A DNA stretch of 64,000 nucleotides, taken from the NCBI GenBank assembly GCA_002269645.1, contig NIVC01000023.1, positions 372,001 through 436,000 of the forward strand, read 5' to 3'. Origin of the DNA: Macrostomum lignano. Lineage: Eukaryota. The translations under genes and the position numbers were made by a program. Positions within the stretch are counted from its first letter, which is position 1. The number at the start of each line of letters is the position of its first letter. The notes beneath the pieces are model-generated. The model ran no database searches. It was given only the letters and a program-made list of their open reading frames with translations, and was not told where the DNA came from. Shown here one piece after another: positions 921-46,955 of this stretch.

Positions 921-1576
921 AAATCCTGATGAAATCCCATGAAATCATCAGTGCCAGTGCTATTGATTGGCATTCCATATCAGACGGAAAGGATGATTCA
1001 GGATAACAATTGAAGCTCAAGATTAAAACACGTAAGATTATGCTTCAAGAAATTTTTTTGAAAAAGAATGTTGGACAAAATCGACGACCATTCGTCGTGA
1101 AGCCAGTTTGCCAAGCGGATACAATGAGTCATCATTGGAGGGGATCTAAGGTACGCGTAAAGATATTCGCTTGTCAGTTGCAGGGGGATCCCTATTCACC
1201 ACTTTCCACCCAGCGCTCGCGTCCACTCCGCTCCAACACTAATCCCCACTCATGCAACCCAGCCGAGGTCATAAACGTTCACAACCTCGCACTGATAAGG
1301 GCCCAACCAATTCCTAAATAGCAGCAACTGTTATCAGCAACGGGGGGAGAAATTCCCACTAAACTGATCTTCTTGGCCCTATGCCCTGATGAAAGCTGGA
1401 TAGAATAATATTGAAATTTCCCTCAGTGACGACTGGACGTTGCCATAACTTGTAGAGTCGTAGATTCCAGAGTTGTTGCTAGTTGTCATAAACTAGGAGG
1501 CTATTATCTCAATTTTACTTTTATTAGAGCTTCTAGACAGAAATGCTTTAATGGTGCAGCTATCTGATAGTATCAA

Positions 1577-2266
1577 CTATACTACATATAAGCAAAACTC
1601 ACCTGTTGCTTTTGGACAGGAGCAGACATTGTCGCCGTCAGTGGCTCGGCACTCGCAGCCGACCGGGCAGTTATTGGACCTGCCAACGCAGTTGTCAAAA
1701 TAGGGCCAGTTGGCTCCTCCGACCAGCCGTTCGGGTGTGGCGTTGCAGCCAGAAGTTACGAAGGTGTTTCTAACCACAGTGCCAGTGTCATTTTTGCCTA
1801 GCAGCCAGGTGACTCTCAGCGGGCCGATTAGGAGAGGAGGAGTCGTTGATGGAGCCCGAGCGCTCGGCACTCCGTCCACCAGCAGCAGCCAGACGGTGTC
1901 GCTGCCATCCGAGTTGGTGGACAGCCGCACAGTCAGATTGACCCAGCGATGGCGCGGCAGTCTTCCAGTTGATGCGGCTATTTCAGCCTCCTCGTCCAGC
2001 GATGCCGACGACTTTAGGCCGAGCTTCGCGTCGCCGCTGGTTGTCAGGAGCAACTGGGCGGACTCTTCGTCAGACAGACCTAGCATGCTGCGCCTCGAAC
2101 CGGCCGCTGAGTCACCTTTAAACAGAACCTCTAGATCGAGCTGCCAGGGACTGGTGCAGCTAGTTGACAAGGCGTACGTTGGAACAAGCAGACTCTGCAC
2201 CATCAGCGTCAGCACCATCAGAGACGATGCTAACGGCGTCGCTGTTCTAGGACCTAAAAATCGCAT
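1577..2266 (-). CDS. Putative secreted protein with laminin-G/ConA-like domain and C-terminal EGF-like Cys module (~229 aa from ATG 2266)
   Basis: ATG at 2266 opens a signal-peptide-like stretch (MRFLGPRTATPLASSLMVLTLMVQSLLVPTYA); LamG-like strands (HRWVNLTVRL..WLLLVDG..WLLG..FVTSGC); then CVGRSNNCPVGCECRATDGDNVCSCPKATGEFC. A donor-like AG|GTGAGT at 1604/1603 means the C-terminus could instead be spliced. Family call is motif recognition only. Confidence 0.55.
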   Translation of the reverse strand: MRFLGPRTATPLASSLMVLTLMVQSLLVPTYALSTSCTSPWQLDLEVLFKGDSAAGSRRSMLGLSDEESAQLLLTTSGDAKLGLKSSASLDEEAEIAASTGRLPRHRWVNLTVRLSTNSDGSDTVWLLLVDGVPSARAPSTTPPLLIGPLRVTWLLGKNDTGTVVRNTFVTSGCNATPERLVGGANWPYFDNCVGRSNNCPVGCECRATDGDNVCSCPKATGEFCLYVV

Positions 2267-2737
2267 GACAACGAGACCTCGTTCGAATCTCGTAGACTTG
2301 AGTACCAACTCTGAGTCTTTAGCTTTGAGTGCGATGTACCAAAGAAATCGTATTTCTTTTTCAAATTCCAAATACTCCTTGCGAACAGTACGAACACGGA
2401 AGCAAAAATTCTATGGGACGTGACTTTTAAATCGTTTACCCCCGTCTCCCTTCGCAGCGATTCATCTCTAGACCTCTTCCGTCTCTTTCCTTTCCCCCTT
2501 CTGCGACGTCCTTCGCCGCATCCCATAAGCTGCTGCAAGTTTAACTCCCTAGACCCAAGTGTACATTCTAGCGAGCAAATTACATGCATTTTCTTCGATT
2601 GTGCAGGCGCAATGGATCACCATGGCGGTAACCTTGGCCCTTCAGCCCACGTAGATGCAGCATAGAAGGCATCCGCTGGCCATTCTAGGAAATATATTCT
2701 AACCCCCATGACTTTGCGCACATTTTTGACGGAACAC

Positions 2738-2745
<8 letters not shown>

Positions 2746-2799
<54 letters not shown>
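2746..2799. repeat. (GA)n microsatellite
   Basis: Perfect GA dinucleotide run. Confidence 0.98.
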
Positions 2800-2802
<3 letters not shown>

Positions 2803-5683
2803 AGCTGCATCAGGAATGAAGAAGCGAAAAATCGATTGTTAGTGCGTTCCCTATTCGGGTCAACCCCGTGCGCAGAAACTACCGAGTGTTCCTTCTGATG
2901 AAGGAAGGAATCTCCACTCTTCTATTCGTTGGTAAACGCTTCAGGCCGTATTTGCAATACGCTTTTCAAAGCTATATATGGGTTAGCTCGTATCTTCCCA
3001 TCGCTAAACAACTGACTGTGTGCCAGCACTGCACCAACGCCGCGATATTGGGTTGCCCACTGACAAGGCTTCAAGGAAAAAGCGCGCAGTGTGCAGCCAT
3101 CTTGCCATTTGCAGTAGTCGCCCCCCATTCACTTCACGGTGTGCTGTCGATGGAAAAGGCCCAAAGCCGCACAAAATGCTTTGGAGTGGTTGGAGGACGG
3201 GCTTATGCACAACAGCTGCTCCTACAATATTAGCTGCAGCATGCACTGCATGTAGATAGATGTGCATGAACCAAAAATGGCGATGCAACAGTTTATGTTA
3301 GTATCGGTATCAGTTGCGGATGTGTCTTGGAAGAAGGCTACGACGATCAGGCCTCGCGTTCATATCACCATGCGGCAGCTTATGCTTGTCCCAGTCAGGT
3401 ACATGTTGCATCGATTTTTCAGTTTTTTACATTCGTTTTCTTTTTTGCCGGCCGCGGCAAGAATCCAAAGCTAGTACACGCTCGTAAAAAACGAATAAAA
3501 ATAAAGTACATACTGCGTCTGCGTCGAAACACTTGATGGCTTCGTAAGGCAATGTACATGTATATATACTTCTATCGCAGTGTACATGTAATAGTAGCAT
3601 CACTATTTAGGAACTTCACTTTAATCTACATGCAAATGCACTGTATACCATAAAACCCTTGGCCTGCTGAAGCAATTCTACATGTACATGCATGGTTGTT
3701 TACATGTATGCGTTCGATTATCTACATATTCAAATATATGACTGTATTTTGCCCTTGGAGCAAAAAAAGTACACACAGCTTAAACTTGACTAACCGTCAA
3801 AAATACATGTATCTTTAGAAATTTCTCTGCCAAATATCCCATTAATTGATTGTTGCTTAATTTGTTACGCTGGGACAGCTTGTTGTGTACACATGTACGC
3901 GCAATTTGCATATGTACATCGATCCTGATACTAGGGACGGCTGAAACAGGTTTAAATTGTGTCTGTGTATAATAGCTATAACTCTTACTTAGTCCATGTA
4001 TTCGGTGCGTTTTTTAACTTTTCTTCCTATCAATTCTATATCGAATTCTGCCATCATTCATATTAACAAAAAGGGTTATAGGGGTCAGGAACCTTGCTAT
4101 CTGGACCAGTTATTACTTGGATTAAAGTAGGCTACGCGTAGGAAGATCAAGAGCATAAAAAGGAATGACTAATTGAGAAGAGGAATATTATTCTGCTGCA
4201 TATACTTAACATTTTTGGCCGTAAAAAGCAAATTCCAATGGGATAAATATTGTTTAGTAATCCAAGTATTAAAGTATGCCAAAGTTAAAATGATACTCCA
4301 TTGTACAATATGGTTAGTCACCCAAAAGCTAGTAAATACCGCGAGAGTCAAAATTGCAAGCCGTTTTGAGCGTGCGTGCGCACGCTTGCAAGAAAATAAA
4401 GCGGGCTGCGATAGCATCGATGACATCATAACTAACAATAGTATTTGACTATTTTCTATAACAAAGTTTACTGAAATACAGTTAAATTTGTCCAAAGTAA
4501 CTTTAAATCTACTATATCCGTTAATTATTTATAAGTCTAGTACAAAATTGTTTTAACGTTACTAGCAGCTTCATAGAAAATAGACACATATTTAATTTAA
4601 GACGGAGATTGTGTTTTATAAATTTTATCCTAAACAAATTTGGCATGAGTTATTTATTACACAATTGTCAATTTCTGAGTTAGATTGGATATTCATGTCA
4701 ATCTATTGAACATTTTCAACAATAACGGCATACACCTATAACCCTATTTTTTCTCAAAAAGCTGCCTAACTCACTAACTATGTACAAGCTGTTTTGCTTT
4801 AATTGTCTTCGTCTACTCAATCAGTCTAACAGTAAGCAAGTTACTTAGTTAGTAGGGGTAGTTACTACTGATGGTGCAATGTTGCATAAGCAGAAGCTAC
4901 GCATTACCTATGCATGTTAAGCCTATACAATGCTTTAAATTGGAAAAAAACTTAAAATGTAGTAGTAGTAGTAGTAGTAGTAAATTTGGCTCAGCCTAAG
5001 GAGCCTGTTATGCCAGTATGATTCGATTTATTTAGTATTTATTCAAAGGGTTAAATTTTACACGATCGCTGAAAACGAGTACTACACGATATTTGTATTA
5101 AGTAGGAAGGTATTTGAAAGGGCGTCAAGAATTTTTTACGGTTTTTTAGGGAAAAATAGAAAATCGATGTATATATATGACCTAATGCAAAACGATTCTT
5201 CTAAAATGCGATTCAGAAAAGGTAGTTAAATATTATTTTGTCAATATAACAAATATCTAGTATAATTAAGGATTGTTCTCAATAATAGGCAATTTTTGTA
5301 AAAAGATATAGTATTTTTGAAAGCGCATGATATTTCAAAGCGTGAAAAACGAGCATAAACACACTTCGAATGAACTTAACGTCTAATGATTAACGACGAA
5401 TTAAATAGGAGATTAAAAAAGACACTAAATGAAGAAACAACTGAAAAGCGGATTTATTGCTCTGCTGATATATCTGTTTCAGTTTGCATAACTGTTTTAG
5501 CTGATAGCTAAATGTATATAAACTGTATTTTAATGCAAATTAGAGGAATAAATTTGGCTTCCAGTTAATTCGGCGACAACCGATTCGGCGACAAGTCAGT
5601 TCGGCGACAGCCAATTCGGCGAATGTTGAAGGTTAAAGAAAGCTATATATATACAACACTCGTTGAAATTTAAAATATTTCAT

Positions 5684-6200: not shown

Positions 6201-7816
6201 TGTACTAGTCTGACGCTGCCGCCGGAGACGCCGCTGCCGGCAGAGGAGAGTTTCAGCGTAGCCCCAGTCAACGCAGCCGACGTTGTCAAGCTCGCCCAGC
6301 AGTCACCGGGCGGGAAAGCGCTGGGTCCGGACGAGGTGCCCATCGAGGCGCTGCGCATCCCCTGTGTGGCCGCTGAGGTCGCCAGAGTGATGAACCGCGT
6401 GCTCTTCGGTGAGGCGGCGCCCAACAAATGGACCACGGCGCACATCGTCGCTGTTCCAAAGAAGCCGGGCACCACTAGGCTTGAAGACCATCGAGGCATC
6501 TGCCTTCAGTCCTGTGCAGCGAAGCTGTTCAACCGGATGCTGCTTTCGCGGTTGCAGCCCGTGCTGGATCCGTACCTGCGCCCAGAGCAGAACGGGTTCC
6601 GGCCCCATCGCGGCACAGTGGCGCAGATCCTGGCTCTTCGCCGAGTCATCGAGGAGGCGCGGATTCGTCAGTCGATACTGATTTTAATCTTTATTGATTT
6701 CAAGAAGGCATTCGACTCGGTTGTCAGAGCCGTGCTTCCAATGGTGCTCCGCGCGTACAACGTGCCTGAGCAGCTGATCTCCGCCGTCATGGCGATGTAC
6801 CGTGATACGACAGCTGCTGTGACAACACCGGACGGCCTATCGGACTCCTTTGAGACATCCTCCGGAGTGCTTCAGGGAGATACGCTGGCGCCGTTTCTGT
6901 TCGTCCTGGTGCTTGACTGGGTGCTGCGGACTGCTCTTCCTACCGACGACGACGGTTTTCTGCTGCAGCGACGCGTGGGTCGACGTCAACCGGAGAAGCG
7001 GCTCAGCGTGCTTGGCTACGCCGACGACCTCGCCCTGCTGTCCTCGACCGTCGAGGGCGCCCAACGGCAGCTGGACAGGCTGGTTGCCGTTGCGGCGAGT
7101 GTCGGCCTGGTGGTCAACACGCAGAAGACCGTTGTGCTCTGCGTGCCGGACGACATCGAGGCTGCAATATTTTGCCGAGGCGCTGACGGGCAGGCGACCG
7201 AACTCCCGCGATGTCAGCAGTTCGTCTACCTCGGCGGTCTGGTTCCAGACGCTCGCGAGGACCTGCGACGCCGCCGCGGGCTTGCCTGGGCTGCCTTTCG
7301 TTCTGTGAGGGCAGTCCTGCAGTCCGAGGCCCTACCGGACCGCCAGAGGGCGGCGCTGTTCCAGGCGGTAATCGAGACCGTCCTGCTGTACAACGCCGAG
7401 ACCTGGACGCTGACGGACTCACTCGAACAGCAAGTCGATGCGGCGCACGCTGGTCTGCTGCGCGCCGCCTTCAACATCGGCGTCGAGCGAGTCACCAACG
7501 CGGCACTCTATCGCCGCGCTGGCCTGCCACGTCCAAGTGATCTACTGCGCCGTCGGCGACTCCAGCTCGCAGGCCATCTCATCCGCGCCGAGTCGTACTG
7601 CCCACAGCCGGTGCAGGAGGTGCTGCTGCTCACGCTGCAGGCACCCTACCGGCGAGGTCAAGCGCGAACTCGGCGTTATGTCGACTGTCTGCTGGCTGAC
7701 GCCGGCGCCCCGGACACTGCCGGTGGCGCGGCCTTTGTTCGCGCCCAAGCCATGAAGCGCGCCCTGTGACGCTGACTTTTACCATCATGACAGCGTATTT
7801 TGTTGTTGTTGTTGTT
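6201..7816 (+). mobile_element. 5'-truncated RTE-clade non-LTR retrotransposon with (TTG)n tail
   Basis: Uninterrupted RT ORF, ~30-nt 3'UTR, (TTG)n tail at ~7799-7816, 13-bp direct repeat ATGTATATGTACA at 6188-6200 and 7817-7829. Confidence 0.85.
6336..7769 (+). CDS. LINE reverse transcriptase (RT plus C-terminal region; frame open from ~6204, no true start)
   Basis: Motifs KALGPDEVP, VPKK, RGICL, EQNGFRP, FIDFKKAFDSV, GVLQGDTLAPFLF, YADD, FVYLG and RTE-like RRRRLQLAGHLIR; no RNase H. Confidence 0.92.
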   Translation: MPIEALRIPCVAAEVARVMNRVLFGEAAPNKWTTAHIVAVPKKPGTTRLEDHRGICLQSCAAKLFNRMLLSRLQPVLDPYLRPEQNGFRPHRGTVAQILALRRVIEEARIRQSILILIFIDFKKAFDSVVRAVLPMVLRAYNVPEQLISAVMAMYRDTTAAVTTPDGLSDSFETSSGVLQGDTLAPFLFVLVLDWVLRTALPTDDDGFLLQRRVGRRQPEKRLSVLGYADDLALLSSTVEGAQRQLDRLVAVAASVGLVVNTQKTVVLCVPDDIEAAIFCRGADGQATELPRCQQFVYLGGLVPDAREDLRRRRGLAWAAFRSVRAVLQSEALPDRQRAALFQAVIETVLLYNAETWTLTDSLEQQVDAAHAGLLRAAFNIGVERVTNAALYRRAGLPRPSDLLRRRRLQLAGHLIRAESYCPQPVQEVLLLTLQAPYRRGQARTRRYVDCLLADAGAPDTAGGAAFVRAQAMKRAL

Positions 7817-17910: not shown

Positions 17911-18002
17911 AGGGCAGAACTGCCATCAGCTCTGGATGCAGATGCACCAGGGTAACTGCATCTCCACCTCCATCTGTTTCAGCTTCCGCAATAAAACAAA
18001 GC

Positions 18003-19888
18003 ATGAAAACTCGCAGAAAGAAGCAGCACCAGACTCCAATCGAATCGTCAAGCTCTTCATCATCGGCCTCGTCAGAATCATCGGATTTAGAATCGTTCAC
18101 CTGCCCAGTCTGCCTGTCGGTGATGGTGAAGCCGGTGCTGTTGCCATGCCAACACGAGCTGTGTCTGGGCTGCCTGATGCAGGCCTGCTCAGGCGACTGG
18201 TGCAGCCTGGCCTGCCCCCTGTGCCGCCGCCGGCTGTCCGTGTGGATGCGCCGAGCTCGCAATCCGGAGCTGCTGGTCAACCAGGACAAATGGCGGCGCA
18301 TTCAACAGCTGCACCCGCGGCTAGTTGAAGTTGTCGAGGCTGGCGGCAGCGCCGACAACGGGGCCGAGCGGCGTCAGCTGGCGCAGCCGGGCGAGCTGCA
18401 AGCTGAGTGGCAAGCCGCGGTGGACGCCTTGACTGCCGAGCGTCGGGCACAGCAGGCGACCGAGGAGGCGGCTTCGTTGGCGCTGATTCGCCGACTGCGC
18501 CTGGCCGAAGCTACGGCGACAGCGATGTCACCGGCGGAGCAGAGCATGGCTGAGGATATCGCTCTGGCTGACGGTGAGTGCTGTGGTGGCCTCTGAAAAA
18601 TCGCCACTTCTTTGAAAAGATTGCTCTAATCTATCACCATGAGAATTACTTTGTAAAAAATTCCCCTCCGTTAAAAACACCTCAAAATTCTCTTTTAAAA
18701 AACCGCCTTTAAAAATCGCCTCTAAAGAACCCCCCCCCCTAATTAAAACTCCTTTCTAAAAAATCGGCCATTAAAAATCGTCTCCTAATGAATCTCCACA
18801 TAAAAAATCTCCCCCCCTAAAGAATCTCCGCAATTAAAAATCGCCCCCTAAAGAATCTTCACATTAAAAATCGCCCATAAAATCTTCACATTAAAAATCG
18901 CCCCCTAAAAATCTCCGCAATTAAAAATTCCAGCCTTTGAGAATCACCCCATTAAAAATCGTCTTTAAAGAATCCCAATTAAAATCGTCCCCTAAAGAAT
19001 CGCCCAAATAAATTTCACCACTAAAAATCTCCCCAATTAAAAATCGCCCCCTAAAGAATCGCCCCATTAAAACTCGCCTCTTAAGAACCCCCGCATTAAA
19101 AATCGCCCCTAAAGAATCGCCCCAAAAAGAATCGCCCCAAAAAGAATCGCCCTTAAAATCGCCCTTGAAGAATCGTCCCTAAAGAATCGCTCTATTAAAA
19201 ATCACCCTTAAAGAATCGCTCCTAATAAATCTCCGCAATAAAAATCGTCATAAAAAATCACCCCCTCCCAGCGGCGATCCCAGACGAGCCCCAGTCCGAG
19301 CCAGGCGACCCGCTTGCCGCTCCGCCAATTCGCCGTCACGACTCCGACGAGTCTTCGGCAATTGTCGACAATCGTTGTCGCCTGTTCTCCGCCACCGCCG
19401 CCGCCTACCTGCGCTGCGACTCGGTTGACAGCATCGGGCCGGAGCTCAATCAGCATTTCCGGCCAATTCAAGCGATGCCGCTGACGCCAACTAAGCCGGC
19501 GAATTCTACGCCGGCATCCACAGCGTCAGGATCGGCGGCTACGCCAGGCTCCGTCAGGAAAGTCGTGCACCGCCCGAAGGCTACTAAACGCCAGAGTCGC
19601 AGAGCTGCCGCGGCCGCTGCAGCCGCCGCTTTGATATCTGGCGGCGGCCGGCCTCGACGGCTGCTCCGGTCGGCCAGCGTTCAAGAAACCGCCTCGACAT
19701 CGTCGACAACTTCAACGAAACCGTCGTCTCGTTGTCTGCGCAGCCAGATGTCTGTAGTGGTGGAATCGCCGGCCGCTACTGCTGGCTTAGAAGAGAGCCT
19801 GCTAGTTGAAGCCGAGAGCTGCTCTGCGGGTAGCGGCGGCTACAGCTTGCGAAAGCTTCATCAACAACAGCAGACAAAGTTTGAGTAA
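18003..19888 (+). CDS. RNF168: RNF168/RNF169-like RING E3 ubiquitin ligase; exons 18003-18573 and 19272-19888
   Basis: C3HC4 RING (CPVC..PVLLPCQHELCLGC..CPLCRRRLSVW), LVNQDKWRRIQQLHP, QPGELQAEW and MIU-like EEAASLALIRRL recall human RNF168; exon 2 has DSIGPELNQHFRPI (cf. RNF169) and a terminal YSLR. Phase-1 GT-AG intron 18574-19271. 3' end less certain (GTAAG overlaps the stop). Confidence 0.82.
18650..19260. repeat. Degenerate ~15/30-bp minisatellite (AAAAATCGCCCC / CTAAAGAATC)
   Basis: Fills the RNF168-like intron up to the acceptor at 19271. Confidence 0.85.
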
Positions 19889-19999: not shown

Positions 20000-20400
20000 A
20001 CCCTCTTTACCCTCTTCCCTCTTTACCCTCTTCCCTCTTTACCCTCTTCCCTCTTTACCCTCTTCCCTCTTTACCCTCTTCCCTCTTTACCCTCTTCCCT
20101 CTTTACCCTCTTCCCTCTTTACCCTCTTTACCCTCTTCCCTCTTTACCCTCTTCCCTCTTCCCTCTTTACCCTCTTTACCCTCTTCCCTCTTTACCCTCT
20201 TTACCCTCTTCCCTCTTCCCTCTTTACCCTCTTCCCTCTTTACCCTCTTTACCCTCTTCCCTCTTTACCCTCTTCCCTCTTTACCCTCTTCCCTCTTTAC
20301 CCTCTTCCCTCTTTACCCTCCTACCCGCTCTTTTCCCTCTTCCCCTCTTTACCTTATTCCCCCTCGTCTCTCCCCTCTGCCCTCTTCCTTTTTTACCCCC
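20000..20400. repeat. Pyrimidine-rich repeat (CCCTCTTTACCCTCTT)n
   Basis: Explains the LPSSLFTLFP pseudo-ORF 19905-20507. Confidence 0.95.
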
Positions 20401-21329
20401 TTCCCCTCTTTGCCCTCTTCCCTTTCTTTAATCACCCACATTTCTATCCTCTGCTGGTCTCTAATTTTGTATTTCAAAAGTTCTCTAATCATTTCCCCTT
20501 CCACTGAGCCAACAGCAGTTAGTCTTATTTGCCAAAGGCTGCAGCACACTTCTAGTCCTCCAAAAATAATGGCTATTGTTATCGCTTTAACCGACGTGTA
20601 TTGCCGATTGCAGATATTTATTAATTGCAAAATATTTAATTTTTAATGTATTTTTTGTACCTGTGTATTGTGTATGCTATAATTTTTATACATTTGTAAC
20701 GCAATAAACAGCTTATCAATATAGTCAATATAGCTATTTAAAATTCTAATATTAATGAGCATTTTATAAGCTTATCAGTAGTATGTCAAGCGTGCTTTAT
20801 ATTTCTCTTATTTAATGAGTTTTTGAGTTTTTGTAATCTCCAGCGTTATGCTGATTTTTTCACTTGGCCATGTATGATTTATTTAATTTACCAATGACTT
20901 AGTTGCCATGGCATCTATTATAATTTATAAAGCATTTTATTACTAAGCTCCATAGTTTAAAAGCAGATTGTTGCTTTTAATTTTGCCGTCGTGTAAACTA
21001 ATTTATATATTGCTATTAGTAGTTGACTTTAAAATGTTTCTAGAACAGCTGTTTCTTTATTTAATGCTTGCTTATTTATTGATTTACTTAACTTTATTGT
21101 TTATTAATTACTTCGTAAATGATTTTGTTAGTGCTCTTTTAATTTTTTCAAGTTTTTTCTGAAAATTGCCAATTACTGAAGGAGCAGCAAGGATCTCCAA
21201 ATTGCCTGGCTATTGTGTAAGATTTGTTCCGGTCTCAGTTCTTTGATTTGGAAATTTAAAAAGCATTTACTTTGATATCTGGATTTTAGGGCTAAGTTGT
21301 CAGTTTTTTTCTTTTTTGAGGGTCAAGCA

Positions 21330-21820
21330 ACTCCGCTTTGAGCCATAGCATCTCAGCAACTCCGCTTTGAGCCATGGCGTCTCAGCAACTCCGCTTTGAG
21401 TCAATTGGCGTCTCAGCAACTTCACATTGAGTCAATTGGCATCTCAGCAACTCTCCATTGAGTCAATTGGCATCTCAGCAACTCCCCCATTGAGTCAATT
21501 GGCATCTCAGCAACTCTCCATTTAGTCAATTGGCATCTCAGCAACTCCCCCATTGAGTCAATTGGCATCTCAGCAACTCTCCATTTAGTCAATTGGCATC
21601 TCAGCAACTCCCCCATTGAGTCAATTGGCATCTCAGCAACTCCCCCAGAAAGCCATGGCATCTCAGCAACTCCCCCATTGAGTCAATTGGCATCTCAGCA
21701 ACTCCCCCAGAAAGCCATGGCATCTCAGCAACTCCCCCATTGAGTCAATTGGCATCTCAGCAACTCCCCCAGAAAGCCATGGCATCTCAGCAACTCCCCC
21801 ATTGAGTCAATTGGCATCTC
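21330..21820. repeat. 31-32-bp minisatellite GCAACTCCCCCATTGAGTCAATTGGCATCTCA
   Basis: About 14 copies ending ~130 bp upstream of the Rho ATG. Confidence 0.93.
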
Positions 21821-21949: not shown

Positions 21950-22774
21950 ATGGACCAGCAGCAGCAGCAGCAACAGCAGGACTCTTCTGTTGTATCAGAT
22001 GGCGCCTCAGCCACCAGTCCTCAGCAGCCGCCAGTTACGGTGAAATGCGTCGCAGTTGGAGATTCCTGCGTAGGCAAAACAGCCAGCCTGATCAGCTACA
22101 CAACTAACGGCTTCCCCAATGCCTATACGCCAACTACGTATGACACTTATTCTATTGATGTTCGCGTTGATCACCGCTGGTGCCGGGTGGCTCTGTGCGA
22201 CACTCCCGGCTTGGACCATTTCGAGCAGATCCGCCCCTTAGCCTATCCGGACGCGCACGTCTTTCTGTTGTGCTTCGCAGTCGCCCAGCCGGAGTCGCTG
22301 GAGTCCTTGAAAGCCAAGTGGCTGCCGGAGTTGAATGAACACGCTCCCGCGCACGCCGCTCGACTGCTTATTGGTTTGAAATCCGATCAACGCGACGACG
22401 CGTCGATATTGTTAGACTTGTCGTTGAAGAATTCTGCACCGGTTAGTAAAGAGGAGGCCGAGAAGGCCTGCAGACAGCTTGGCGCACTGGAGTACATCGA
22501 GTGCAGCGCGCTGACTCAGAAATGTCTCAAAGAAGTGTTCGACACGGCCATCTGGGCCGGTTCGAGTGTTCAAGAAGCCCTGGCTACTGGGGCGGCGGCG
22601 TCCGGAAAGTCTGGCAAGTCGCGAGGCAAGAAATCCAAAAGCTCAAAGGTGAGCGACCAGAGTGGCTGCAAGTTGATGGCTAAAAGAGGCGCGGATGGCG
22701 CCAGGCAGCAGCAGCAGAAATCTTCCGGCTTGTTGCAACGACTTTTCTGCGTGGCTGATCACTCCGCGAACTGA
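21950..22774 (+). CDS. RHOU: Intronless RhoU/RhoV (Wrch-1/Chp)-like small GTPase, 274 aa
   Basis: G1 GDSCVGKT, subfamily-typical SYTTNGFP, G3 LCDTPG, G4 LKSD, G5 YIECSALTQKCLKEVFD, Lys-rich tail ending LFCVADHSAN with no CAAX. RhoU versus RhoV cannot be separated by eye. Confidence 0.85.
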   Translation: MDQQQQQQQQDSSVVSDGASATSPQQPPVTVKCVAVGDSCVGKTASLISYTTNGFPNAYTPTTYDTYSIDVRVDHRWCRVALCDTPGLDHFEQIRPLAYPDAHVFLLCFAVAQPESLESLKAKWLPELNEHAPAHAARLLIGLKSDQRDDASILLDLSLKNSAPVSKEEAEKACRQLGALEYIECSALTQKCLKEVFDTAIWAGSSVQEALATGAAASGKSGKSRGKKSKSSKVSDQSGCKLMAKRGADGARQQQQKSSGLLQRLFCVADHSAN

Positions 22775-23109
22775 GCGAATTAATAAATCAATTATCGATT
22801 TTTATTGCTTATCTATTTTCATTAATTAATAATAATTTATTTACTTCTAATTCTATTGTGCATTGTTTTTAACCTGGGTAAAAACTTGCTTTTTAAGGTT
22901 TTTTAGCACCTGCCTTGTTGCAGAGTAACATGTAGAATGTAAAGTACTGTGTGTACTCTGAATTTTTCTCCTGCTATATATTTACGAGTCCAGAGATTTC
23001 CATTTTCTGTCTGCCTGGATCGTTAAATAATCAAATATATCTGTTGATATAATGGGCCTCGTTCTTCTTATATTATTATTGAAGGAGTTATGAAACTTGT
23101 TGGTCAGTA

Positions 23110-24290
23110 AGTTACTCTTATTGCCCTTTTCCACTTTTACCCATTTTCTCTCCCGCCTTTCCCCCTCTTTCTCCTCTCCCCTCTTTTCCCCTCTCCCCTC
23201 TTTCATCCCCCTCTTTTCCCTCTTTCCCCTCTTTTTCACTCTCCCCTCTTTTCCCTCCCCCTCTTCCCCTCTTTCCGCTCTTCCCCTCTGTCCCCTCTTT
23301 CCCCCTGTTCCCTCTTCCCCCTTTTCCCCTCTTCCTCTTTTCCCCTGTTCCCCTGTTCCCCTCTTTCCCCTCTTCCCCTCTGTCCCCTCTTTCCCCCTTT
23401 TCCCCTCTTTCCCCTCTTCCCCTCTGTCCCCTCTTTTCCCCTGTTCCCCTGTTCCCCTCTTTCCCCTCTGTCCCCTCTTTCCCCCTTTTCCCCTCTTTCC
23501 GCTCTTCCCCTCTGTCCCCTCTTTTCCCCTGTTCCCCTCTTTCCCCTCTTCCCCTCTGTCCCCTCTTTCCCCCTTTTCCCCTCTTTCCCCTCTTCCCCTC
23601 TGTCCCCTCTTTCCCCCTGTTCCCTCTTCCCCCTTTTCCCCTCTTCCTCTTTTCCCCTGTTCCCCTCTTTCCCCTCTTCCCCTCTGTCCCCTCTTTCCCC
23701 CCTTTTTCCCTCTTTTCCCTCTTCCCCTCTGTCCCCTCTTTTCCCCTGTTCCCCTCTTCCCCTCTTCCCCTCTTCCCCCTTTTCCCCTCTTTCCGCTCTT
23801 CCCCTCTGTCCCCTCTTTTCCCCTGTTCCCCTGTTCCCCTCTTTCCCCTCTTCCCCTCTGTCCCCTCTTTCCCCCTTTTCCCCTCTTTCCCCTCTTCCCC
23901 TCTGTCCCCTCTTTTCCCCTGTTCCCCTGTTCCCCTCTTTCCCCTCTGTCCCCTCTTTCCCCCTTTTCCCCTCTTTCCGCTCTTCCCCTCTGTCCCCTCT
24001 TTTCCCCTGTTCCCCTGTTCCCCTCTTTCCCCTCTTCCCCTCTGTCCCCTTTTTCCCCCTTTTCCCCTCTTTCCCCTCTTCCCCTCTGTCCCCTCTTTCC
24101 CCCTTTTCCCCTCTTTCCGCTCTTCCCCTCTGTCCCCTCTTTCCCCCTTTTCCCCTCTTTCCGCTCTTCCCCTCTGTCCCCTCTTTTCCCCTGTTCCCCT
24201 GTTCCCCTCTTTCCCCTCTTCCCCTCTTCCCCTCTTCCCCCTTTTCCTCTCTTTCCGCTCTTCCCCTCTTTTCCTCCTTTCCTTTTTCCC
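23110..24290. repeat. ~1.2-kb polypyrimidine/polypurine repeat (TTCCCCTC/TGTCCCCTC variants)
   Basis: Almost only C/T on the + strand; source of the 438-aa and 414-aa artefact ORFs. Confidence 0.97.
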
Positions 24291-25074
24291 TTGATCATCC
24301 TTATTTCTAAAGGAATTCCTTTCTTCTCTCGTGGCTATTAAGATGATCGATTTTTATTATTGACTTTTTATAATAAAATCAATTTGTTTAGTATCTCTTG
24401 ATCATAAAACACTCAGTGATGCAATAATATAGCCCAACTTCGCGTGCTTGCATGTAAACGGAGGATGATTTGTGGCGTGTAAAATTTTTGACCTATCAAC
24501 TATATTTTATCATTTTTTTATTGTATTGAGATGCATACATTTGTGTAAGTATTATTGTAACAATATGCTTTTCAATGAGCTCAGTTTCACAATAAAATGT
24601 ATCAATAATGAGTTAACAGTACAAAGTTCTGTAACGGAAATTGTCTTGAAAAGTGCATTGCTAATGTTCTTTTCGTAAACCCAGCCGTCGTTAAAATCTA
24701 AAAAACATCGGATATCCTATGCGTCAGAAATAAATTAATAAACAAACACCTACACGTATTGTTTATTAGACAATTTTGTAATAATTTGAGTGTAATAATA
24801 CAGTTGGTTTCCTGAACTTTTTTTAGCTAATAGTTTGTAACTTTAATTAGTAAGTTTTATTATCTAAAAGTTTTGTTACTTCAGTTTTATTGCATGTTTT
24901 AATCTATGTTATATCCACTGTGCTCACAGCTGCTCCGTGTGCTGCAAATATTACAATATAACGACTTGTATTCGTTACAATTCTCTCTAATAATACTACT
25001 GGCGCCTTTCACTCAGTAGTATGATTAATAACCCACTACATTTTTGGGGAGTACAGCGAGCGGCAATATTGTGT

Positions 25075-25095
25075 CTGTCGGTCTGTCTGTCTGTC

Positions 25096-25130
<35 letters not shown>

Positions 25131-25177
25131 GACTGTGTGTCTGTCTGTCTGTCTGTCTGCCTGTCTGTCTGTCTGAC

Positions 25178-25212
<35 letters not shown>

Positions 25213-25275
25213 GTGTCTGTCTGTCTGTCTGTATGTCTGTCTGACTGTCTGCCTGTCTGTCTGTCTGCCTGCCTA

Positions 25276-25308
<33 letters not shown>

Positions 25309-25440
25309 GACTGTCTGTCTGCCTGTCTGTCTGTCTGTCTGTCTGTCTATCTGTCTGTCTGTCTTTCTGTTTATCTGTCTGTCTCTCTGCCTGCCTATGT
25401 CTGTCTGTCTTAGTGTCTGTTTGTTTTTCTGTCTGTGTGT
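25075..25440. repeat. (CTGT)n microsatellite
   Basis: Imperfect tetranucleotide run. Confidence 0.95.
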
Positions 25441-25924
25441 GTGTATGTTTCGTTGATCTTCCGAAAGAACCCCAGTTGATTCAGTTGAATGTTTATTTCA
25501 TCTACTATTCTCAACAGTTTTGGCTTACCAGCCGTATTCACATAGTAAAAAGATCTCCCCGAAAAATGCAGAGAAGGCATGCAGTGTTTATATATCAAAT
25601 AGTATTTTATATTACATTCTGCAATTTGCGTCTAATTCCATGCAAACCTGATGCTGTTAAGCTACTGTAAGTAGTAACAAAACCAGTTTTTTTAAATGAT
25701 TTTTTGTAAAACGAAATTGAATGCATGATTTTGCTTGTTTGTTTTTCAACTACCAATCTGTTTATTTATTAAATGTATATCATAAATAAAAGCTTGTTTC
25801 AGAATTTACCGCCACTATATGTTGGCTTTTGCCTGGTGTAGCTTAATTTTAACCTGACTTCTTCACGCTCAAGAACTTAATCAAGTTTTTTATTTACTTG
25901 TCTTTTCATTGAAATTACATTTCC

Positions 25925-40584: not shown

Positions 40585-43500
40585 CACTGAGACACAGACT
40601 CAGACGAGATTCTTAGGGAACACAAGATTGAACTGGCGGTTGAAGAACCTTCTTGACTGAACCAAGGGTGAGGGGTCTGCATTTATAGTGGGATTCACCC
40701 CTGCCCCAACACACAAGACCTCGTGACTTTGTTCTATTTTTAGAACTGACGTCACTGGGGTCTCCGGGCAGAGTGCACAAGGCTGTGACTCAGTGTCTAT
40801 TTTTAGAAACATGAGTCACTCCTCTCCTTAGAGAAGGGAAGGGCCTTAGGCACGTGATTCTCCCGTAAACACAAACATTTTTACTGCACTTTAGGACTCC
40901 AAGAAAACAAGATCTGTCATGTGACTTGCTCACATGACAGGGGAAACAGGCCAACAGCTTGACCTCAAGACTGGAACGAAACAAGGGCCCAGACCACAGC
41001 AGAGAATCTTGTGGCTGCAAACGAGAGCGCAGAAAACGGGCAGAAAACAGGAAAGGGGGGACCGCATACAGGCAGACAAAGGGAAGGCGGGAAGCTGATC
41101 AGCGGCAGACAGCGACCCAGGGCGAGGGCGAGGGCTTGACTTACTTGACTTAGCTGCAGGGCTGTCCCGGGGGGACACAGAGGGAACCCGCGAGCGCCCA
41201 TTCCGCTAATCCCTGAACGGCCGACGCGTCGCTATGGACGAAGGGTTGGCGCCGCCCAAGGAGGTCCCCCAGTGTCGCCAGCAGCTATGTACTCTCTGCA
41301 GAAAAAAGAGTTCAGCCCTGTGTGTGGCCCGAGGTAAGTGAGTCTGGCTCGCGTAAAGGCGGGACAGATGCTGACGAAATGCTCAGCGGTTTCGTCACCT
41401 GAGTTACAGAAACTACAGATGGCGTTGGTGGCGTTGCCCTGCAGGTACTTGTGCCTAGAGAAGCAGCCGTGACTTGAGAGGGTCATGGTGGCAGCCCGGA
41501 TGTCTCTGCGCGACAGGCGCAAGAGGAGCTTCCGGGCTGGTGAGAGGGCTGAGGGACAGCGCCTCTGGATTGCCTGCAGGTAGTGCAGTTCGCCCAAGCC
41601 GAGCGGTGCTGGGTCCTGATCCACGCGTTGATGCGCGAGTCGATGACACAGCCAGGAATCGGGACAAGGGGTTCGGGACCGAGAGAGGAGCCGGAGGCGC
41701 CAACTTTTGCTAAGGCGTCAGCCAACTCATTCCCTCGGATCCCCACATGCCGCGGAACCCACTTAAGGGTGATTTTGTTGGTGGAGCTCAACATGTTGAG
41801 GAGTTGGATACGAGCACTGTAGCAGAACTGGGACTACAGCCACTGATGGCGTGCAAGGCAGCTTGGCTGTCCGAATGGAAAATGATGTTCTTACCGGATA
41901 CGCCAGTGGTGAGAAGCTCTGAAATGCAGGAGCTGATGGCGAGAACTTCACTTTGGAAGACACTGGAGTTGACCCCAGTGTACTGAGCGTGGGTTGCGAT
42001 GACCCTCCCGTTCAGGAAGATTCCAACACCAAAACCGGTTTTGGCTGACTTCTTAGAACCATCGGTGTAGCAGTGAAGCTCCCCATGGTTCCAGTGGTCA
42101 TTGATGGTATCGCGCGAGTCGAAAGCTACGGAGTAGCGTTGTCTCAGGTTGAGCGTTGTTGAGGCAATGCCATCGGTGAAGACGCGATTGGCCTGACACT
42201 CGTTGAGAATGTTGAGGCACAGGTCGCTATGCGGGACGAAGTTCCGCTTAGCAGGTGCCCTCATGTAAAGGAATTTGATACCGGCATCAAGTAAACGCCG
42301 CGTCGTTCTAGCCGCCTCACCCCTGACGAAGAGGTCGAGAGGCGGTAGATTAAGGAAGGCCCCCATGCCGGCAAAGGGCGTGGACCTGGTGGCGTTGCAG
42401 ATAAGCCTACACGCTCTGTCCTGGATCGTGTTGAGCAAATCTGCATGGCTTTTGACCTGGGTAGCGCAACCCAGACAACCGAGGCAGGTACGTAATGGCA
42501 GGTCTAACTACGGAAGTGTAGATCCACCAAAGCCGCTTTGGAGAAAGACCCCAAGAAGTGCCAAGTGCTCGTCGGAGCTGGGCCAGGATGACTGAGGCAT
42601 GCTTGGCTTTTGCTTTCACGTGGAAGGACCAGTTGAGCCGGTGGTCAAGTATGACCCCGAGACATCTGGTCTGGTGCGCGAAGGCAATATCTCTGCCGTA
42701 TAACTGCAGAGGTCGTATGTTCCAGCGTATTCTGCTGGTGAACATAATGGCAACAGTTTTGGGCTCAGAGAGTTCCAGACCGTTGTCATTGGCCCAGGAT
42801 TCTGCTTTGCGGATAAAGCTCTGCATCAGATCCCTGAGCGTGCTGGGGGACGGCTCTGCCACAATGGCAGTGACGTCGTCAGCATACCCGACTTTGAAGA
42901 CGGGATCAGGTCGGGAGTCGCCCAGAAGAGCGTCCATGACCAGGTTCCAGAGCGTCGGGGTGAGGACTTCACCTTGGGGTCCGCCCTTACAAACTCTGGC
43001 GGAGGCAGTTTGCCAAAGAAGTTGGGCAGTGACCGTAAGGTTAGAGATCATGTACATGATCCACCGTATGGGGGTAGCGTGAGCTTTGCGGTTTTTAAGG
43101 GCCCTCTGAAACCCTTCAAAGATAACGTTGTCGAAGGCGCCAAAAATTTCGAAAAAAAGAGCCAGGGCGTAACCGTCATCCATTACCGCCCGTTCAATGT
43201 TCTCGACTATCGCATGCAGGGCGCTGTCAGTCGACCTCCCGGTACGGAAGGCGTGCTGGTGATTGCTGAGGTGCATTGCTGTCAGCTCGCATGAAAGCAG
43301 CCGCCAGAGAATAAGCCTCTCAGTGAGCTTAAGTATTGCTGACGTTAAGCTAATTGGCCTAAAGGCCTTGACGCTCTGGTAGTCACCTTTCCCAGGTTTG
43401 GGAATGAAGACTACCCGAGCTTCGGTCCAGCACTTGGGAACGTATCCCATCTGGATAGAGGCCCACGTGAGATTGCGGGTAAGTCTCAAGAACGAGGGTA

Positions 43501-46500: not shown

Positions 46501-46955
46501 TGCGACCGGACAACTCCCCGGCCTTCCAGCCCATCGGCACGGTCGAACACCTTAGGCATTAGAGGGTGCGTTGAGCAGTACCACGGCCTGCGGACTGGCG
46601 AGCCAGACCCGCATACACAAGTTCGGCAAAGCCACTGGATGGGTCCCCAGCGCCGGAGCCCAGTCTGTCCGGCAGCCCTAGGGTCTGCCTTGAACACACG
46701 CGGGGACGAGTACCCTGGGTCGGCTTGCGAGACAGCGTGGGGGGGGGTCTGCGGCTGCCAGCGGCAAATAGAGGGTGCAGACCTCCCTCCAGCCTTTACC
46801 TGCTGAAGATAGGGGCAGGCGTGGAGCATCGCAGACCTTAGCCCATAGGCCTGGTCTGTCTCATACTTCACTGGCATGCTTAATATGCCCGTGCGAGCGA
46901 GGGCGAGGGCGAGGGAAACTGCTGACAAAGGGGGGCGCCTAACACCAAACTAGCG
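40585..46955 (-). mobile_element. Near full-length, inactivated non-LTR retrotransposon: ORF1 (basic, gag-like) - APE - RT - RNase H - CCHC (LOA/R1-like architecture)
   Basis: ORF1 pieces 45798-46928 and 44790-45776 (same frame, one TAG). APE: LQINLKH, LILIQEPW, GGDLNAHH.WGS. RT 42407-43753: KSPGPDG, FRPISLTS, QHAFRTGRST, GGPQG, YADD. RNase H: YTDGSK, VFQSEVLAI, HSDSQAAL, WVPRHVGIRGNELAD. Zinc knuckle CSFC..ETAEHFVSIC. Several frameshifts; exact ends and TSD not defined. Confidence 0.9.

What the first reader, a model, noticed from the sequence alone, without database searches (positions are those of the whole stretch)
21950..22774. RhoU/V-like GTPase with natural G12S- and Q61L-equivalent substitutions
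Seen: P-loop GDSCVGKT (Ser39, codon 22064-22066, at Cdc42 Gly12) and switch II DTPGL (Leu88, codon 22211-22213, at Gln61; Pro at Ala59). GKT, Thr35, KxD and SA are kept and the ORF is intact. Established: substitutions at 12 and 61 block GTP hydrolysis (Q61L is the standard constitutively active allele); RhoH and Rnd are GTPase-dead through such changes, whereas RhoU/V normally keep G12/Q61 and are fast-cycling. Inference: an independently evolved, constitutively GTP-bound Rho controlled by expression or localisation. The non-CAAX tail (LFCVADHSAN) suggests palmitoylation.
Basis: partly seen in the sequence, partly recalled or inferred. Interest (0 to 1): 0.7.

Follow-up and report, generated by a model that had tools for sequence, protein, structure and literature searches.

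The report
Flatworm RhoU/V GTPase, probably GTP-locked
This is a real, conserved gene of the flatworm Macrostomum lignano encoding a divergent RhoU/V-type signalling switch whose "off" chemistry is probably disabled by natural changes at positions that cause permanent activation when mutated in Ras or Rho, which makes it a modestly interesting new example of a known kind of always-on Rho protein.

Summary
ORF 21950-22774(+) encodes an intact 274-aa Rho-family GTPase of Macrostomum lignano, deposited only as a "hypothetical protein". It has Ser at Gly12 (TCC, 22064-22066), Cys at Ala13, Pro at Ala59 and Leu at Gln61 (TTG, 22211-22213).

Three syntenic copies in the genome keep identical codons at these sites. 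They evolve under strong purifying selection (dS 0.04-0.10, dN 0-0.0016), so this is not a sequencing error or a dead retrocopy.

Placement in the RhoU/V subfamily has moderate support: the Cys56 signature, a non-CAAX tail whose Cys267 aligns with the conserved tail Cys, the tree, profile scores, and closest fit to human RhoU. The protein is the most divergent member seen, differing at 32 of 94 conserved columns. It also lacks the Tyr28 linked to RhoU/V fast cycling.

Among 207 RhoU/V-type domains, Gly12 is kept in 199, Ala59 in 197 and Gln61 in 194. None has the Ser12+Pro59+Leu61 combination.

The most likely mechanism is inferred, not tested: the protein binds GTP, hardly hydrolyses it, and is controlled by expression, turnover and membrane targeting, as RhoH and Rnd proteins are.

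Precedents lower the novelty: C. elegans CHW-1 (Ala12), cnidarian RhoUV G3-box variants and locust Leu61 proteins.

The parts
21950..22774 (+). Complete intronless CDS (274 aa plus TGA) of a divergent RhoU/V-type Rho GTPase of Macrostomum lignano
   Evidence: Searches show the ORF. Pfam Ras scores 2e-36. The best solved structure by sequence is human RhoU, 1.8e-53. The protein is identical to the gene model on NIVC01000023.1.
21950..22036 (+). N-terminal extension (aa 1-29) with polyQ (aa 3-10, 21956-21979) and a single PxxP-like SPQQPPV (22016-22036); predicted disordered
   Evidence: pLDDT is below 50 for residues 1-13 and low up to about residue 20. PolyQ length varies among the three copies, giving 274, 275 and 277 aa.
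22058..22081 (+). P-loop GDSCVGKT: Ser39 (TCC, 22064-22066) at Gly12 and Cys40 (TGC, 22067-22069) at Ala13
   Evidence: Gly12 is present in 199 of 207 and Ala13 in 192 of 207 RhoU/V-type domains.
22112..22114 (+). Phe55 (TTC) at position 28, where RhoU/V normally have the Tyr linked to fast nucleotide exchange
   Evidence: Tyr is present in 184 of 207 and Phe in 22. The role of Tyr28 is taken from PMC13236570 and PMC10903452.
22124..22150 (+). Switch I / effector loop YTPTTYDTY; Tyr32, Pro34, Thr35 (Thr62), Asp38 and Tyr40 equivalents kept; Phe37 is Tyr
22196..22249 (+). Cys83 (the Cys56 signature of RhoU/V) followed by switch II DTPGLDHFEQIRPLAYP: Pro86 (CCC, 22205-22207) at Ala59 and Leu88 (TTG, 22211-22213) at Gln61
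   Evidence: Cys56 is present in 117 of 118 high-scoring RhoU/V proteins. Ala59 is present in 197 and Gln61 in 194 of 207.
22373..22387 (+). G4 motif G-L-K-S-D: Lys and Asp kept, Thr115 replaced by Leu143
   Evidence: Thr is present in 200 of 207.
22388..22441 (+). Rho insert region (aa 147-164), modelled as a helix at residues 151-159
   Evidence: Alignment to RhoU and Cdc42; AlphaFold model.
22499..22513 (+). G5 motif E-C-S-A-L
   Evidence: Ser158 is present in 118 of 118, Ala159 in 106 and Leu160 in 118.
22607..22648 (+). Polybasic stretch KSGKSRGKKSKSSK in the disordered C-terminal extension (inferred membrane-binding element)
   Evidence: pLDDT is below 50 for residues 234-274 and low from about residue 220.
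22742..22771 (+). Non-CAAX tail LFCVADHSAN; Cys267 (22748-22750) is the candidate palmitoylation site
   Evidence: Cys267 falls in the near-invariant tail Cys column of the 53-sequence, mostly RhoU/V, alignment. Extended tails after the Cys also occur in other RhoU/V proteins.
22782..22787 (+). AATAAA polyadenylation-signal consensus 8 nt after the stop codon
   Evidence: This is a sequence match only.

Best explanation
The ORF is a functional gene of Macrostomum lignano, present in three syntenic copies, that encodes a highly divergent member of the RhoU/V (Wrch/Chp) branch of Rho GTPases. It keeps every residue needed to bind guanine nucleotide and Mg2+ and keeps the core effector loop. It carries Ser at position 12, Pro at 59 and Leu at 61. 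By established Ras/Rho biochemistry these changes remove the catalytic glutamine and obstruct the GAP arginine finger. The protein is therefore most likely loaded with GTP after synthesis and stays GTP-bound, so it acts as a constitutively 'on' Rho. Its output would be set by transcription, protein turnover and membrane targeting (polybasic stretch plus palmitoylation of Cys267) rather than by GEFs and GAPs, as in RhoH and Rnd proteins. Canonical RhoU/V are thought to stay GTP-loaded through fast exchange linked to Tyr28. This protein has Phe28, so it would reach the same end state by lost hydrolysis instead. Shown here: the gene is real, the residues are fixed, selection is purifying, and the protein has Rho fold and RhoU/V affinity. 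Inferred: GTP-locking, palmitoylation and CRIB/PAK-type effector use.
For: The ORF and codons are confirmed. It is a Ras/Rho domain, and the best PDB sequence hit is human RhoU. The AlphaFold model of the G domain is confident, and RhoU 2q3h gives the best superposition (TM 0.94, rmsd 1.5 A). Three copies lie on three contigs with the same neighbours. Pairwise dS is 0.043-0.10 against dN 0-0.0016, omega 0-0.04, with 18 synonymous and 0 non-synonymous differences between the window copy and L009. Flanks are only about 88-98% identical. All copies use the same TCC, CCC and TTG codons. For RhoU/V placement: a 33-member clade holding every named RhoU and RhoV has 61% bootstrap support; the sister group is entirely RhoU/V-type in 179 of 200 replicates; profile scores are 217 for RhoU/V, 207 for Cdc42-type and 202 for Rac-type; Cys56 is shared; and tail Cys267 aligns. 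Nucleotide-binding residues are kept. The literature attributes GTPase deficiency of RhoH and Rnd to loss of Gly12 and switch II changes, with control by expression and turnover (PMC13236570). Native CHW-1 with Ala at position 12 behaves as partly activated (PMC5982818). The gene models derive from RNA-seq-based assembly (PMC5730564).
Against: Ser at position 12 is among the milder substitutions. Pro59 and Leu115 are uncharacterised in Rho proteins and could alter nucleotide affinity rather than only hydrolysis. Some GTPases that lack Gln61 are still switched off by GAPs that supply the catalytic residue in trans (Rap and RapGAP; my own knowledge). RhoU/V placement has only moderate support: 61% clade bootstrap and a 6-10 bit profile margin. 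The sister group is unstable and consists of other long-branch sequences. No transcript-derived copy was found in the protein collection, and no expression values were found in supplements. No orthologue from another flatworm was found that could date the changes.
Confidence: 0.6

Rival explanations
1. The protein still cycles. Ser12 is tolerated, and a dedicated GAP (or residual intrinsic activity) hydrolyses GTP despite Leu61, for example by supplying a catalytic residue in trans as RapGAP does for Rap. On this view it is a regulated switch with unusual chemistry.
For: Strong purifying selection on the whole G domain, including the switch regions, is compatible with continued interaction with regulators. 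Phe28, the classical slow-exchange residue, would suit a GEF-dependent switch. GAPs that act in trans on GTPases without Gln61 are established for Rap (my own knowledge).
Against: Three hydrolysis-relevant positions (12, 59, 61) are changed together, the same pattern as in the GTPase-deficient RhoH and Rnd. Q61L is the standard hydrolysis-dead allele in Rho proteins. No such GAP is known for the Rho family.
Confidence: 0.15
2. It is a pseudoGTPase with weakened or lost nucleotide binding. The combination Cys13, Pro59 and Leu115 distorts the pocket, and the protein works as a nucleotide-independent scaffold.
For: The protein differs from the RhoU/V consensus at 32 of 94 columns that are at least 90% conserved, against a median of 1.5 and a next-highest value of 17. 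These include pocket positions 13, 28, 59 and 115. Thr115 corresponds to Ras Asn116, where mutations lower nucleotide affinity (my own knowledge).
Against: All direct nucleotide and Mg2+ ligands are kept: Lys16, Thr17, Thr35, Asp57, Gly60, Lys116, Asp118 and Ser158-Ala159. A D-x-P-G-x G3 motif is normal in translation-factor GTPases that bind GTP well (my own knowledge). Leu at position 115 also occurs in other Rho proteins. The fold is predicted with high confidence.
Confidence: 0.12
3. It is not a RhoU/V orthologue. It is a fast-evolving Cdc42- or Rac-derived paralogue that acquired Cys56 and a non-CAAX tail by convergence. The mechanism could still be GTP-locking.
For: The profile margin over Cdc42-type is only 10 bits, or 6 with the odd positions masked. 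Clade bootstrap is 61%. PDB sequence scores for RhoU and Cdc42 are almost equal. Phe28 and Lys116 are Rac-like. No canonical flatworm RhoU/V was found for comparison.
Against: Cys56 occurs in 117 of 118 RhoU/V proteins, whereas the Cdc42-type and Rac-type hits have Phe or Trp there. The tail Cys aligns with the RhoU/V tail Cys. Both N- and C-terminal extensions are present. The sister group is RhoU/V-type in 89.5% of bootstrap replicates. RhoU gives the best structural fit.
Confidence: 0.12
4. It is a non-functional retrocopy or pseudogene, or the unusual residues are assembly errors.
For: The gene is intronless. No transcript-derived protein copy was seen in the collection.
Against: Three loci share identical critical codons. 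Omega is 0-0.04, with roughly 22 synonymous changes against 1 non-synonymous change overall. The ORF is intact in all copies. The gene models come from a transcriptome-based annotation. Synteny is conserved, so the copies arose by segmental or whole-genome duplication and not by repeated retroposition.
Confidence: 0.02

Closest known systems
RhoU (Wrch-1) and RhoV (Chp), the vertebrate and invertebrate RhoUV subfamily
   Same: Rho G domain with a Rho insert. Cys at position 56. N- and C-terminal extensions. No CAAX box, and a tail Cys in the conserved position. Core effector-loop residues kept. Best sequence and structural match to human RhoU. Both are expected to be mostly GTP-bound and controlled by expression and localisation.
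   Different: Only about 45-52% identical in the G domain, whereas the canonical-type RhoU/V protein P0004 is 59-65% identical to RhoU proteins of several phyla. It has Ser12, Cys13, Pro59 and Leu61 where the family has Gly, Ala, Ala and Gln. It has Phe instead of the fast-cycling Tyr28 and Leu instead of Thr115. The N-terminus has a polyQ run and only one weak PxxP. The tail continues for 7 residues after the Cys.
C. elegans CHW-1, the single nematode RhoU/V orthologue
   Same: An invertebrate RhoU/V-type protein with a natural non-Gly residue at position 12. It is described as partly constitutively active, and reverting to Gly changes its activity in vivo (PMC5982818). In the tree, nematode-type sequences are among the unstable sister candidates.
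   Different: CHW-1 has Ala at position 12 and lacks the N-terminal extension. The related nematode-type sequence P0008 (Acrobeloides nanus) has Val12 and keeps Gln61. The flatworm protein also changes positions 59 and 61 and has both extensions.
RhoH and Rnd1-3, the GTPase-deficient atypical Rho proteins
   Same: A non-Gly residue at position 12 combined with switch II changes. This is the recognised signature of hydrolysis-deficient, GAP-insensitive Rho proteins that are regulated by expression and turnover (PMC13236570).
   Different: It is not closely related to them: the 60 best PDB sequence matches are all RhoU, Cdc42 or Rac, and it groups with RhoU/V. Rnd proteins are farnesylated through a CAAX box (my own knowledge), whereas this protein has none. 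The resemblance is convergent.
Schistocerca (locust) RhoU/V-type proteins (P0039 cluster, auto-named 'cell division control protein 42 homolog')
   Same: Cys56-type Rho with a natural Leu at position 61 and Phe at position 28, conserved in four species. After the flatworm protein it is the second most divergent RhoU/V in the set.
   Different: The locust proteins keep Gly12, Ala13 and Ala59 and end in a Cys-rich tail, LLCCCRR.
Cnidarian RhoUV proteins with G3-box substitutions
   Same: Reported in the literature as RhoUV members that lack GTPase activity because of G3-box changes (PMC7600811).
   Different: A different phylum, and their sequences were not examined here. The published alignment describes a CAAX box for that set.

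Membership tests
Rho family of small GTPases | Ras-like G domain with G1-G5 motifs | tested here: met
   Pfam Ras scores 2e-36. GxxxxGKT, Thr35, DxxG, xKxD and SAL are all present. The AlphaFold G domain is confident, and Foldseek TM to Rho structures is 0.85-0.94.
Rho family of small GTPases | Rho insert helix between G4 and G5 | tested here: met
   Residues 147-164 align without gaps to the insert of RhoU and Cdc42 and are modelled as a helix at 151-159.
RhoU/V (RhoUV) subfamily | Groups phylogenetically with RhoU/RhoV rather than with Cdc42, Rac or Rho | tested here: met
   The NJ clade holding every named RhoU and RhoV has 61% bootstrap support. The sister group is entirely RhoU/V-type in 179 of 200 replicates. 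Profile scores are 217.1 against 206.9 and 201.6 bits. Support is moderate, not strong.
RhoU/V (RhoUV) subfamily | Cys at position 56 (Phe in Cdc42, Trp in Rac); an empirical signature derived here | tested here: met
   Cys83 matches the Cys present in 117 of 118 high-scoring RhoU/V proteins. Cdc42-type and Rac-type hits have Phe or Trp.
RhoU/V (RhoUV) subfamily | No CAAX box; C-terminal extension with a palmitoylated Cys | tested here: met
   The tail LFCVADHSAN has no Cys at position -4. Cys267 falls in the near-invariant tail Cys column. Palmitoylation itself cannot be tested with these tools.
RhoU/V (RhoUV) subfamily | N-terminal extension with proline-rich SH3-binding motifs | tested here: inconclusive
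   A 29-residue extension is present, but it has only one PxxP (PQQP) and no flanking basic residue. CHW-1 lacks the extension altogether, so the feature is not universal.
RhoU/V (RhoUV) subfamily | Tyr at position 28, proposed basis of fast nucleotide exchange | tested here: not met
   The window protein has Phe55. Tyr is present in 184 of 207 RhoU/V-type domains and Phe in 22. The role of the feature is taken from PMC13236570 and PMC10903452. About 10% of accepted members also have Phe, so this weakens membership without excluding it.
GTPase-deficient atypical Rho proteins (a functional class: RhoH, Rnd1-3) | Non-Gly at position 12 and a non-catalytic residue at position 61 | tested here: met
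   Ser39 and Leu88, plus Pro86 at position 59.
GTPase-deficient atypical Rho proteins (a functional class: RhoH, Rnd1-3) | Binds GTP but shows no intrinsic or GAP-stimulated hydrolysis | not testable with these tools
   This needs purified protein. Only the retention of the nucleotide ligands can be shown.
RhoH or Rnd subfamilies (by descent) | Closest sequence relatives are RhoH or Rnd | tested here: not met
   The 60 best PDB sequence matches are RhoU, Cdc42 and Rac only. The protein falls in the RhoU/V clade.

The most novel reading that the evidence does not exclude
Within RhoU/V, the GTP-loaded state may have been re-engineered more than once, replacing fast exchange (Tyr28) with dead hydrolysis (Leu61 or a non-Gly residue at 12) together with tight binding (Phe28). 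The flatworm protein would be the extreme case, and Cys13 in its P-loop might add redox or covalent control of the nucleotide pocket. The data give only a hint. In 5 of 9 lineages with a non-canonical residue at 12 or 61, Phe28 is present, against 10 of 47 canonical lineages (Fisher p = 0.048 at 80% collapsing, but p = 0.32 at 70%).
Probability: 0.15. Interest if true: 0.55.

Novelty: new member of a known kind. Interest (0 to 1): 0.33.

Why it matters
Naturally "always-on" small GTPases show how a molecular switch can turn into a dose-controlled signal. The textbook cases, RhoH and Rnd, are largely vertebrate-studied. This one is a convergent case inside the RhoU/V branch, and it carries exactly the residues (positions 12 and 61) that are used experimentally as activating alleles. 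It occurs in a flatworm that has transgenesis and a regeneration biology community. It gives a natural experiment on which features of a Rho protein stay under selection once the GTPase cycle is gone: here the whole G domain remains under strong constraint. It could also be used as a native constitutively active probe for PAK/CRIB-type pathways in flatworms. The advance is incremental, because related natural variants (CHW-1, cnidarian RhoUV) are already described.

Tried and rejected
1. A Biopython NJ bootstrap timed out. I replaced it with a numpy NJ.

2. The search for orthologues in other Macrostomum species or other flatworms found nothing. The word-indexed search found only the three M. 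lignano copies above 49% identity. The exhaustive representative search found nothing above 51%. The profile search and the P0004 search listed no named platyhelminth among the 120 hits each shows. The substitutions therefore cannot be dated, and a canonical M. lignano RhoU/V paralogue can be neither shown nor excluded. Those lists are capped: 8000 and 1503 candidates were scored, and 120 hits were shown.

3. I considered that P0004 (identical GDSCVGKT P-loop, canonical DTAGQ) might be a flatworm intermediate. Its taxon could not be identified, since its best named relatives are 60-65% identical molluscs and chelicerates. It uses AGT for Ser where M. lignano uses TCC. I treat it as probably convergent, but this is unresolved.

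4. Direct expression evidence was sought by searching the gene IDs Mlig003733 and Mlig009472 in the supplements of three M. lignano papers. There were no hits.

5. The association of Phe28 with non-canonical residues at 12 or 61 looked striking in raw counts but is not robust after collapsing lineages. I keep it only as a hint.

6. I asked whether divergence is concentrated in switch II, as loss of GAP/GEF contacts might predict. It is not: divergence is spread over all regions.

7. Foldseek does not separate Rho subfamilies by E-value. Only TM and rmsd favour RhoU.
Full report
**1. What is in the sequence**

The window carries an uninterrupted ORF at 21950-22774 on the + strand, 274 codons plus TGA. 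An in-frame TAA lies 18 nt upstream of the ATG, and an AATAAA lies at 22782-22787, 8 nt after the stop. The CDS is 56% G+C, against 40-46% in the flanks.

Ser39 is TCC at 22064-22066, Pro86 is CCC at 22205-22207 and Leu88 is TTG at 22211-22213. The protein matches Pfam Ras at 2e-36. Its best solved-structure relative by sequence is human RhoU (2q3h, 1.8e-53), followed closely by Cdc42 and Rac.

Those alignments are gap-free across the P-loop and switch II. They place Ser39 at Gly12, Cys40 at Ala13, Pro86 at Ala59 and Leu88 at Gln61. Lys16/Thr17, Tyr32, Thr35, Asp38, Tyr40, Asp57, Gly60, Lys116/Asp118 and Ser158-Ala159-Leu160 are all retained.

**2. Source, copies and selection**

The protein is identical to a gene model of the flatworm Macrostomum lignano, assembly GCA_002269645.1, contig NIVC01000023.1. 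The same assembly holds two further copies: PAA72496.1 on NIVC01001088.1 and PAA52428.1 on NIVC01003244.1, both named "hypothetical protein". All three sit between the same neighbours. A 401-aa gene lies upstream in two loci, with the RING-finger ORF at window 18003-18596 inside its span; the third locus begins within a gene that has a faint RING hit. A C2-domain gene lies downstream. The copies are therefore duplicated segments, which fits the known redundancy of this genome (PMC5730564).

The three coding sequences differ by a polyQ length change and a handful of substitutions. Pairwise dS is 0.043, 0.095 and 0.101. Pairwise dN is 0.0016, 0.0016 and 0, giving omega of 0-0.04. The window copy and L009 differ at 18 synonymous and 0 non-synonymous sites. 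Flanking DNA is only about 88-98% identical and has many indels. The P-loop and switch II codons are identical in all three copies.

This rules out a sequencing artefact and argues strongly against a decaying retrocopy. The Mlig_3_7 gene models were built from RNA-seq (StringTie/TACO plus a de novo transcriptome, with boundaries taken from trans-splice and poly(A) reads; PMC5730564). The existence of the models therefore implies transcription. I could not find expression values for these IDs.

**3. Which Rho is it?**

An exhaustive HMMER search of 1.84 billion representatives found nothing above about 51% identity other than the protein's own cluster. I built a neighbour-joining tree of 131 G domains taken from the top hits. 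The three M. lignano copies fall in a 33-member clade that contains every sequence named RhoU or RhoV, with 61% bootstrap support. In 179 of 200 replicates the trio's immediate sister group consists only of RhoU/V-type sequences. The identity of that sister is unstable: it is either locust or nematode long-branch proteins.

Profile HMMs give 217.1 bits for RhoU/V, 206.9 for Cdc42-type and 201.6 for Rac-type. With the unusual positions masked, the scores are 208.9, 203.0 and 197.3.

Other evidence points the same way:
- The residue before switch II is Cys (position 56). It is Cys in 117 of 118 high-scoring RhoU/V proteins, but Phe or Trp in Cdc42-type and Rac-type hits.
- The protein has a 29-residue N-terminal extension and a roughly 70-residue C-terminal extension.
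- It has no CAAX box, and Cys267 aligns with the near-invariant Cys of the RhoU/V tail.
- An AlphaFold model (mean pLDDT 76.7; over 90 for most of the G domain; both tails disordered) superposes best on human RhoU, with TM 0.94 and rmsd 1.5 A. Foldseek E-values do not separate the Rho subfamilies.

I therefore file it as a divergent RhoU/V-type protein with moderate confidence.

**4. How unusual are the substitutions?**

Position 12 is Gly in 199, position 13 is Ala in 192, position 59 is Ala in 197, position 61 is Gln in 194, position 28 is Tyr in 184 and position 115 is Thr in 200. None combines Ser12, Pro59 and Leu61.

The M. lignano protein departs from the consensus at 32 of 94 columns that are at least 90% conserved. 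The median is 1.5 and the next-highest value is 17. This divergence is spread over all regions and is not confined to switch II.

Deviations at these positions do recur in the subfamily:
- Four Schistocerca species share a RhoU/V-type protein with Leu61.
- A nematode protein (Acrobeloides) has Val12.
- An RNA-seq-derived protein of unknown taxon (P0004) has the identical GDSCVGKT P-loop but a canonical DTAGQ.
- The literature records CHW-1 with Ala at position 12, behaving as partly activated (PMC5982818).
- The literature also records cnidarian RhoUV proteins with G3-box changes said to abolish GTPase activity (PMC7600811).

P0004 encodes its Ser with AGT, whereas M. lignano uses TCC. It is no closer to the flatworm protein (44%) than other RhoU/V proteins are. 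I regard the shared P-loop as probably convergent, but P0004's taxon could not be determined. Ser TCC is two nucleotide steps from any Gly codon, and Leu TTG is two steps from either Gln codon, so neither change is a fresh single-step mutation. That is an inference from the codons reported.

**5. Mechanism**

Established Ras/Rho biochemistry says that Gln61 positions the attacking water, and that any side chain at position 12 clashes with the GAP arginine finger. Q61L is the standard hydrolysis-dead allele. RhoH and Rnd proteins are GTPase-deficient through just such changes and are regulated by expression level and rapid turnover (PMC13236570).

The flatworm protein retains all nucleotide and Mg2+ ligands. 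The most likely outcome is therefore a protein that binds GTP and stays GTP-bound.

Canonical RhoU/V are thought to be largely GTP-loaded for a different reason, namely fast intrinsic exchange linked to Tyr28 (PMC13236570 and PMC10903452). The flatworm protein has Phe at that position. It would therefore reach the same signalling state by a different route.

The polybasic stretch (aa 220-233) and Cys267 would target it to membranes, by analogy with palmitoylated RhoU/V. Conserved Tyr32, Thr35, Asp38 and Tyr40 are compatible with CRIB/PAK-type effectors. All of this paragraph is inference.

The rival readings are set out in the Rival explanations section. They are: residual or trans-catalysed hydrolysis; impaired nucleotide binding through Cys13, Pro59 and Leu115; and a non-RhoU/V origin.

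I also looked for an association between Phe28 and non-canonical residues at 12 or 61. It is suggestive in raw counts but marginal after collapsing lineages: p = 0.048 at an 80% threshold and 0.32 at 70%.

**6. Verdict**

The protein is best described as a new, convergent member of the known class of naturally GTPase-impaired atypical Rho proteins, arising within the RhoU/V branch. It is of moderate interest. The residues involved are the textbook activating ones, the gene is under strong constraint, and the host is experimentally tractable. Against that, precedents in the same subfamily already exist.

Noticed in passing
window 21348-21820: A 62-bp tandem repeat (7.6 copies, 94% matches; 32-bp sub-period) ends about 130 bp upstream of the Rho start codon. 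In the paralogous locus L001, BLAST matches to this unit run from about 1380 to 4780, so the array there appears to be about 3.4 kb against 0.47 kb here. Its copy number differs strongly between the duplicated loci. It also produces a spurious 79-aa ORF on the minus strand.
   Followed up: partly
window 23157-24282: A 1.1-kb CT-rich minisatellite (unit CTTTCCCCT, about 130 copies) lies about 380 bp downstream of the gene. It creates long artefactual ORFs on both strands: 22982-24298(-), 438 aa, rich in Gly, Lys, Arg and Glu, and 23097-24341(+), 414 aa.
   Followed up: partly
window 19000-19247, 20001-20423 and 25072-25448: Three more simple arrays flank the gene: a degenerate array of about 15/29-bp period, a (CCCTCTTTACCCTCTT)n array of about 27 copies, and a (TGTC)n array of about 94 copies. 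The intergenic DNA around this gene is unusually rich in tandem repeats.
   Followed up: no
window 6336-7769(+) and 42407-43753(-): Two long ORFs carry reverse-transcriptase domains (RVT_1, 1.5e-28 and 1e-25). They are probably retrotransposon copies. The adjacent ORFs at 44790-46928(-) have no Pfam match.
   Followed up: no
window 49245-51686(+): An 813-aa ORF has only weak, sub-threshold tenascin/teneurin-type EGF matches near its C-terminus. It may be an exon of a larger extracellular-protein gene.
   Followed up: no
window up to about 15332, about 17985-19888, and from about 27648: The neighbouring gene models are a Tfb2 (TFIIH subunit) gene, a 401-aa gene whose span includes the RING-finger ORF at 18003-18596, and a C2-domain gene. 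The upstream RING-type gene and the downstream C2 gene recur at the other two loci. The name 'Mlig003733g2' suggests that the Rho gene is the second gene of a trans-spliced transcriptional unit.
   Followed up: partly
P0039 cluster (Schistocerca gregaria, americana, cancellata, nitens): Locust proteins auto-named 'cell division control protein 42 homolog' are RhoU/V-type (Cys56, Cys-rich non-CAAX tail) and carry a natural Leu at position 61 and Phe at position 28, conserved across four species. I found no mention of this in the papers read.
   Followed up: partly
L002-L007 (Logan RNA-seq contigs, SRR23434829-43 and SRR3984663): P0004 is a 241-aa RhoU/V protein from an unidentified organism, with Ser12 and Cys13 (GDSCVGKT, Ser = AGT) but a canonical DTAGQ, Tyr28 and a CCFF tail. 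It was assembled in 22 transcript contigs. Its closest named relatives are only 60-65% identical.
   Followed up: partly
P0009, P0012 and P0083 (clupeiform and engraulid fish RhoU-like proteins): These fish RhoU paralogues read CDVSGE followed by an insertion in switch II, in place of DTAGQ, and have tails that continue after the Cys (KKFSCIAETMTQ). They may be another naturally non-canonical RhoU lineage.
   Followed up: no
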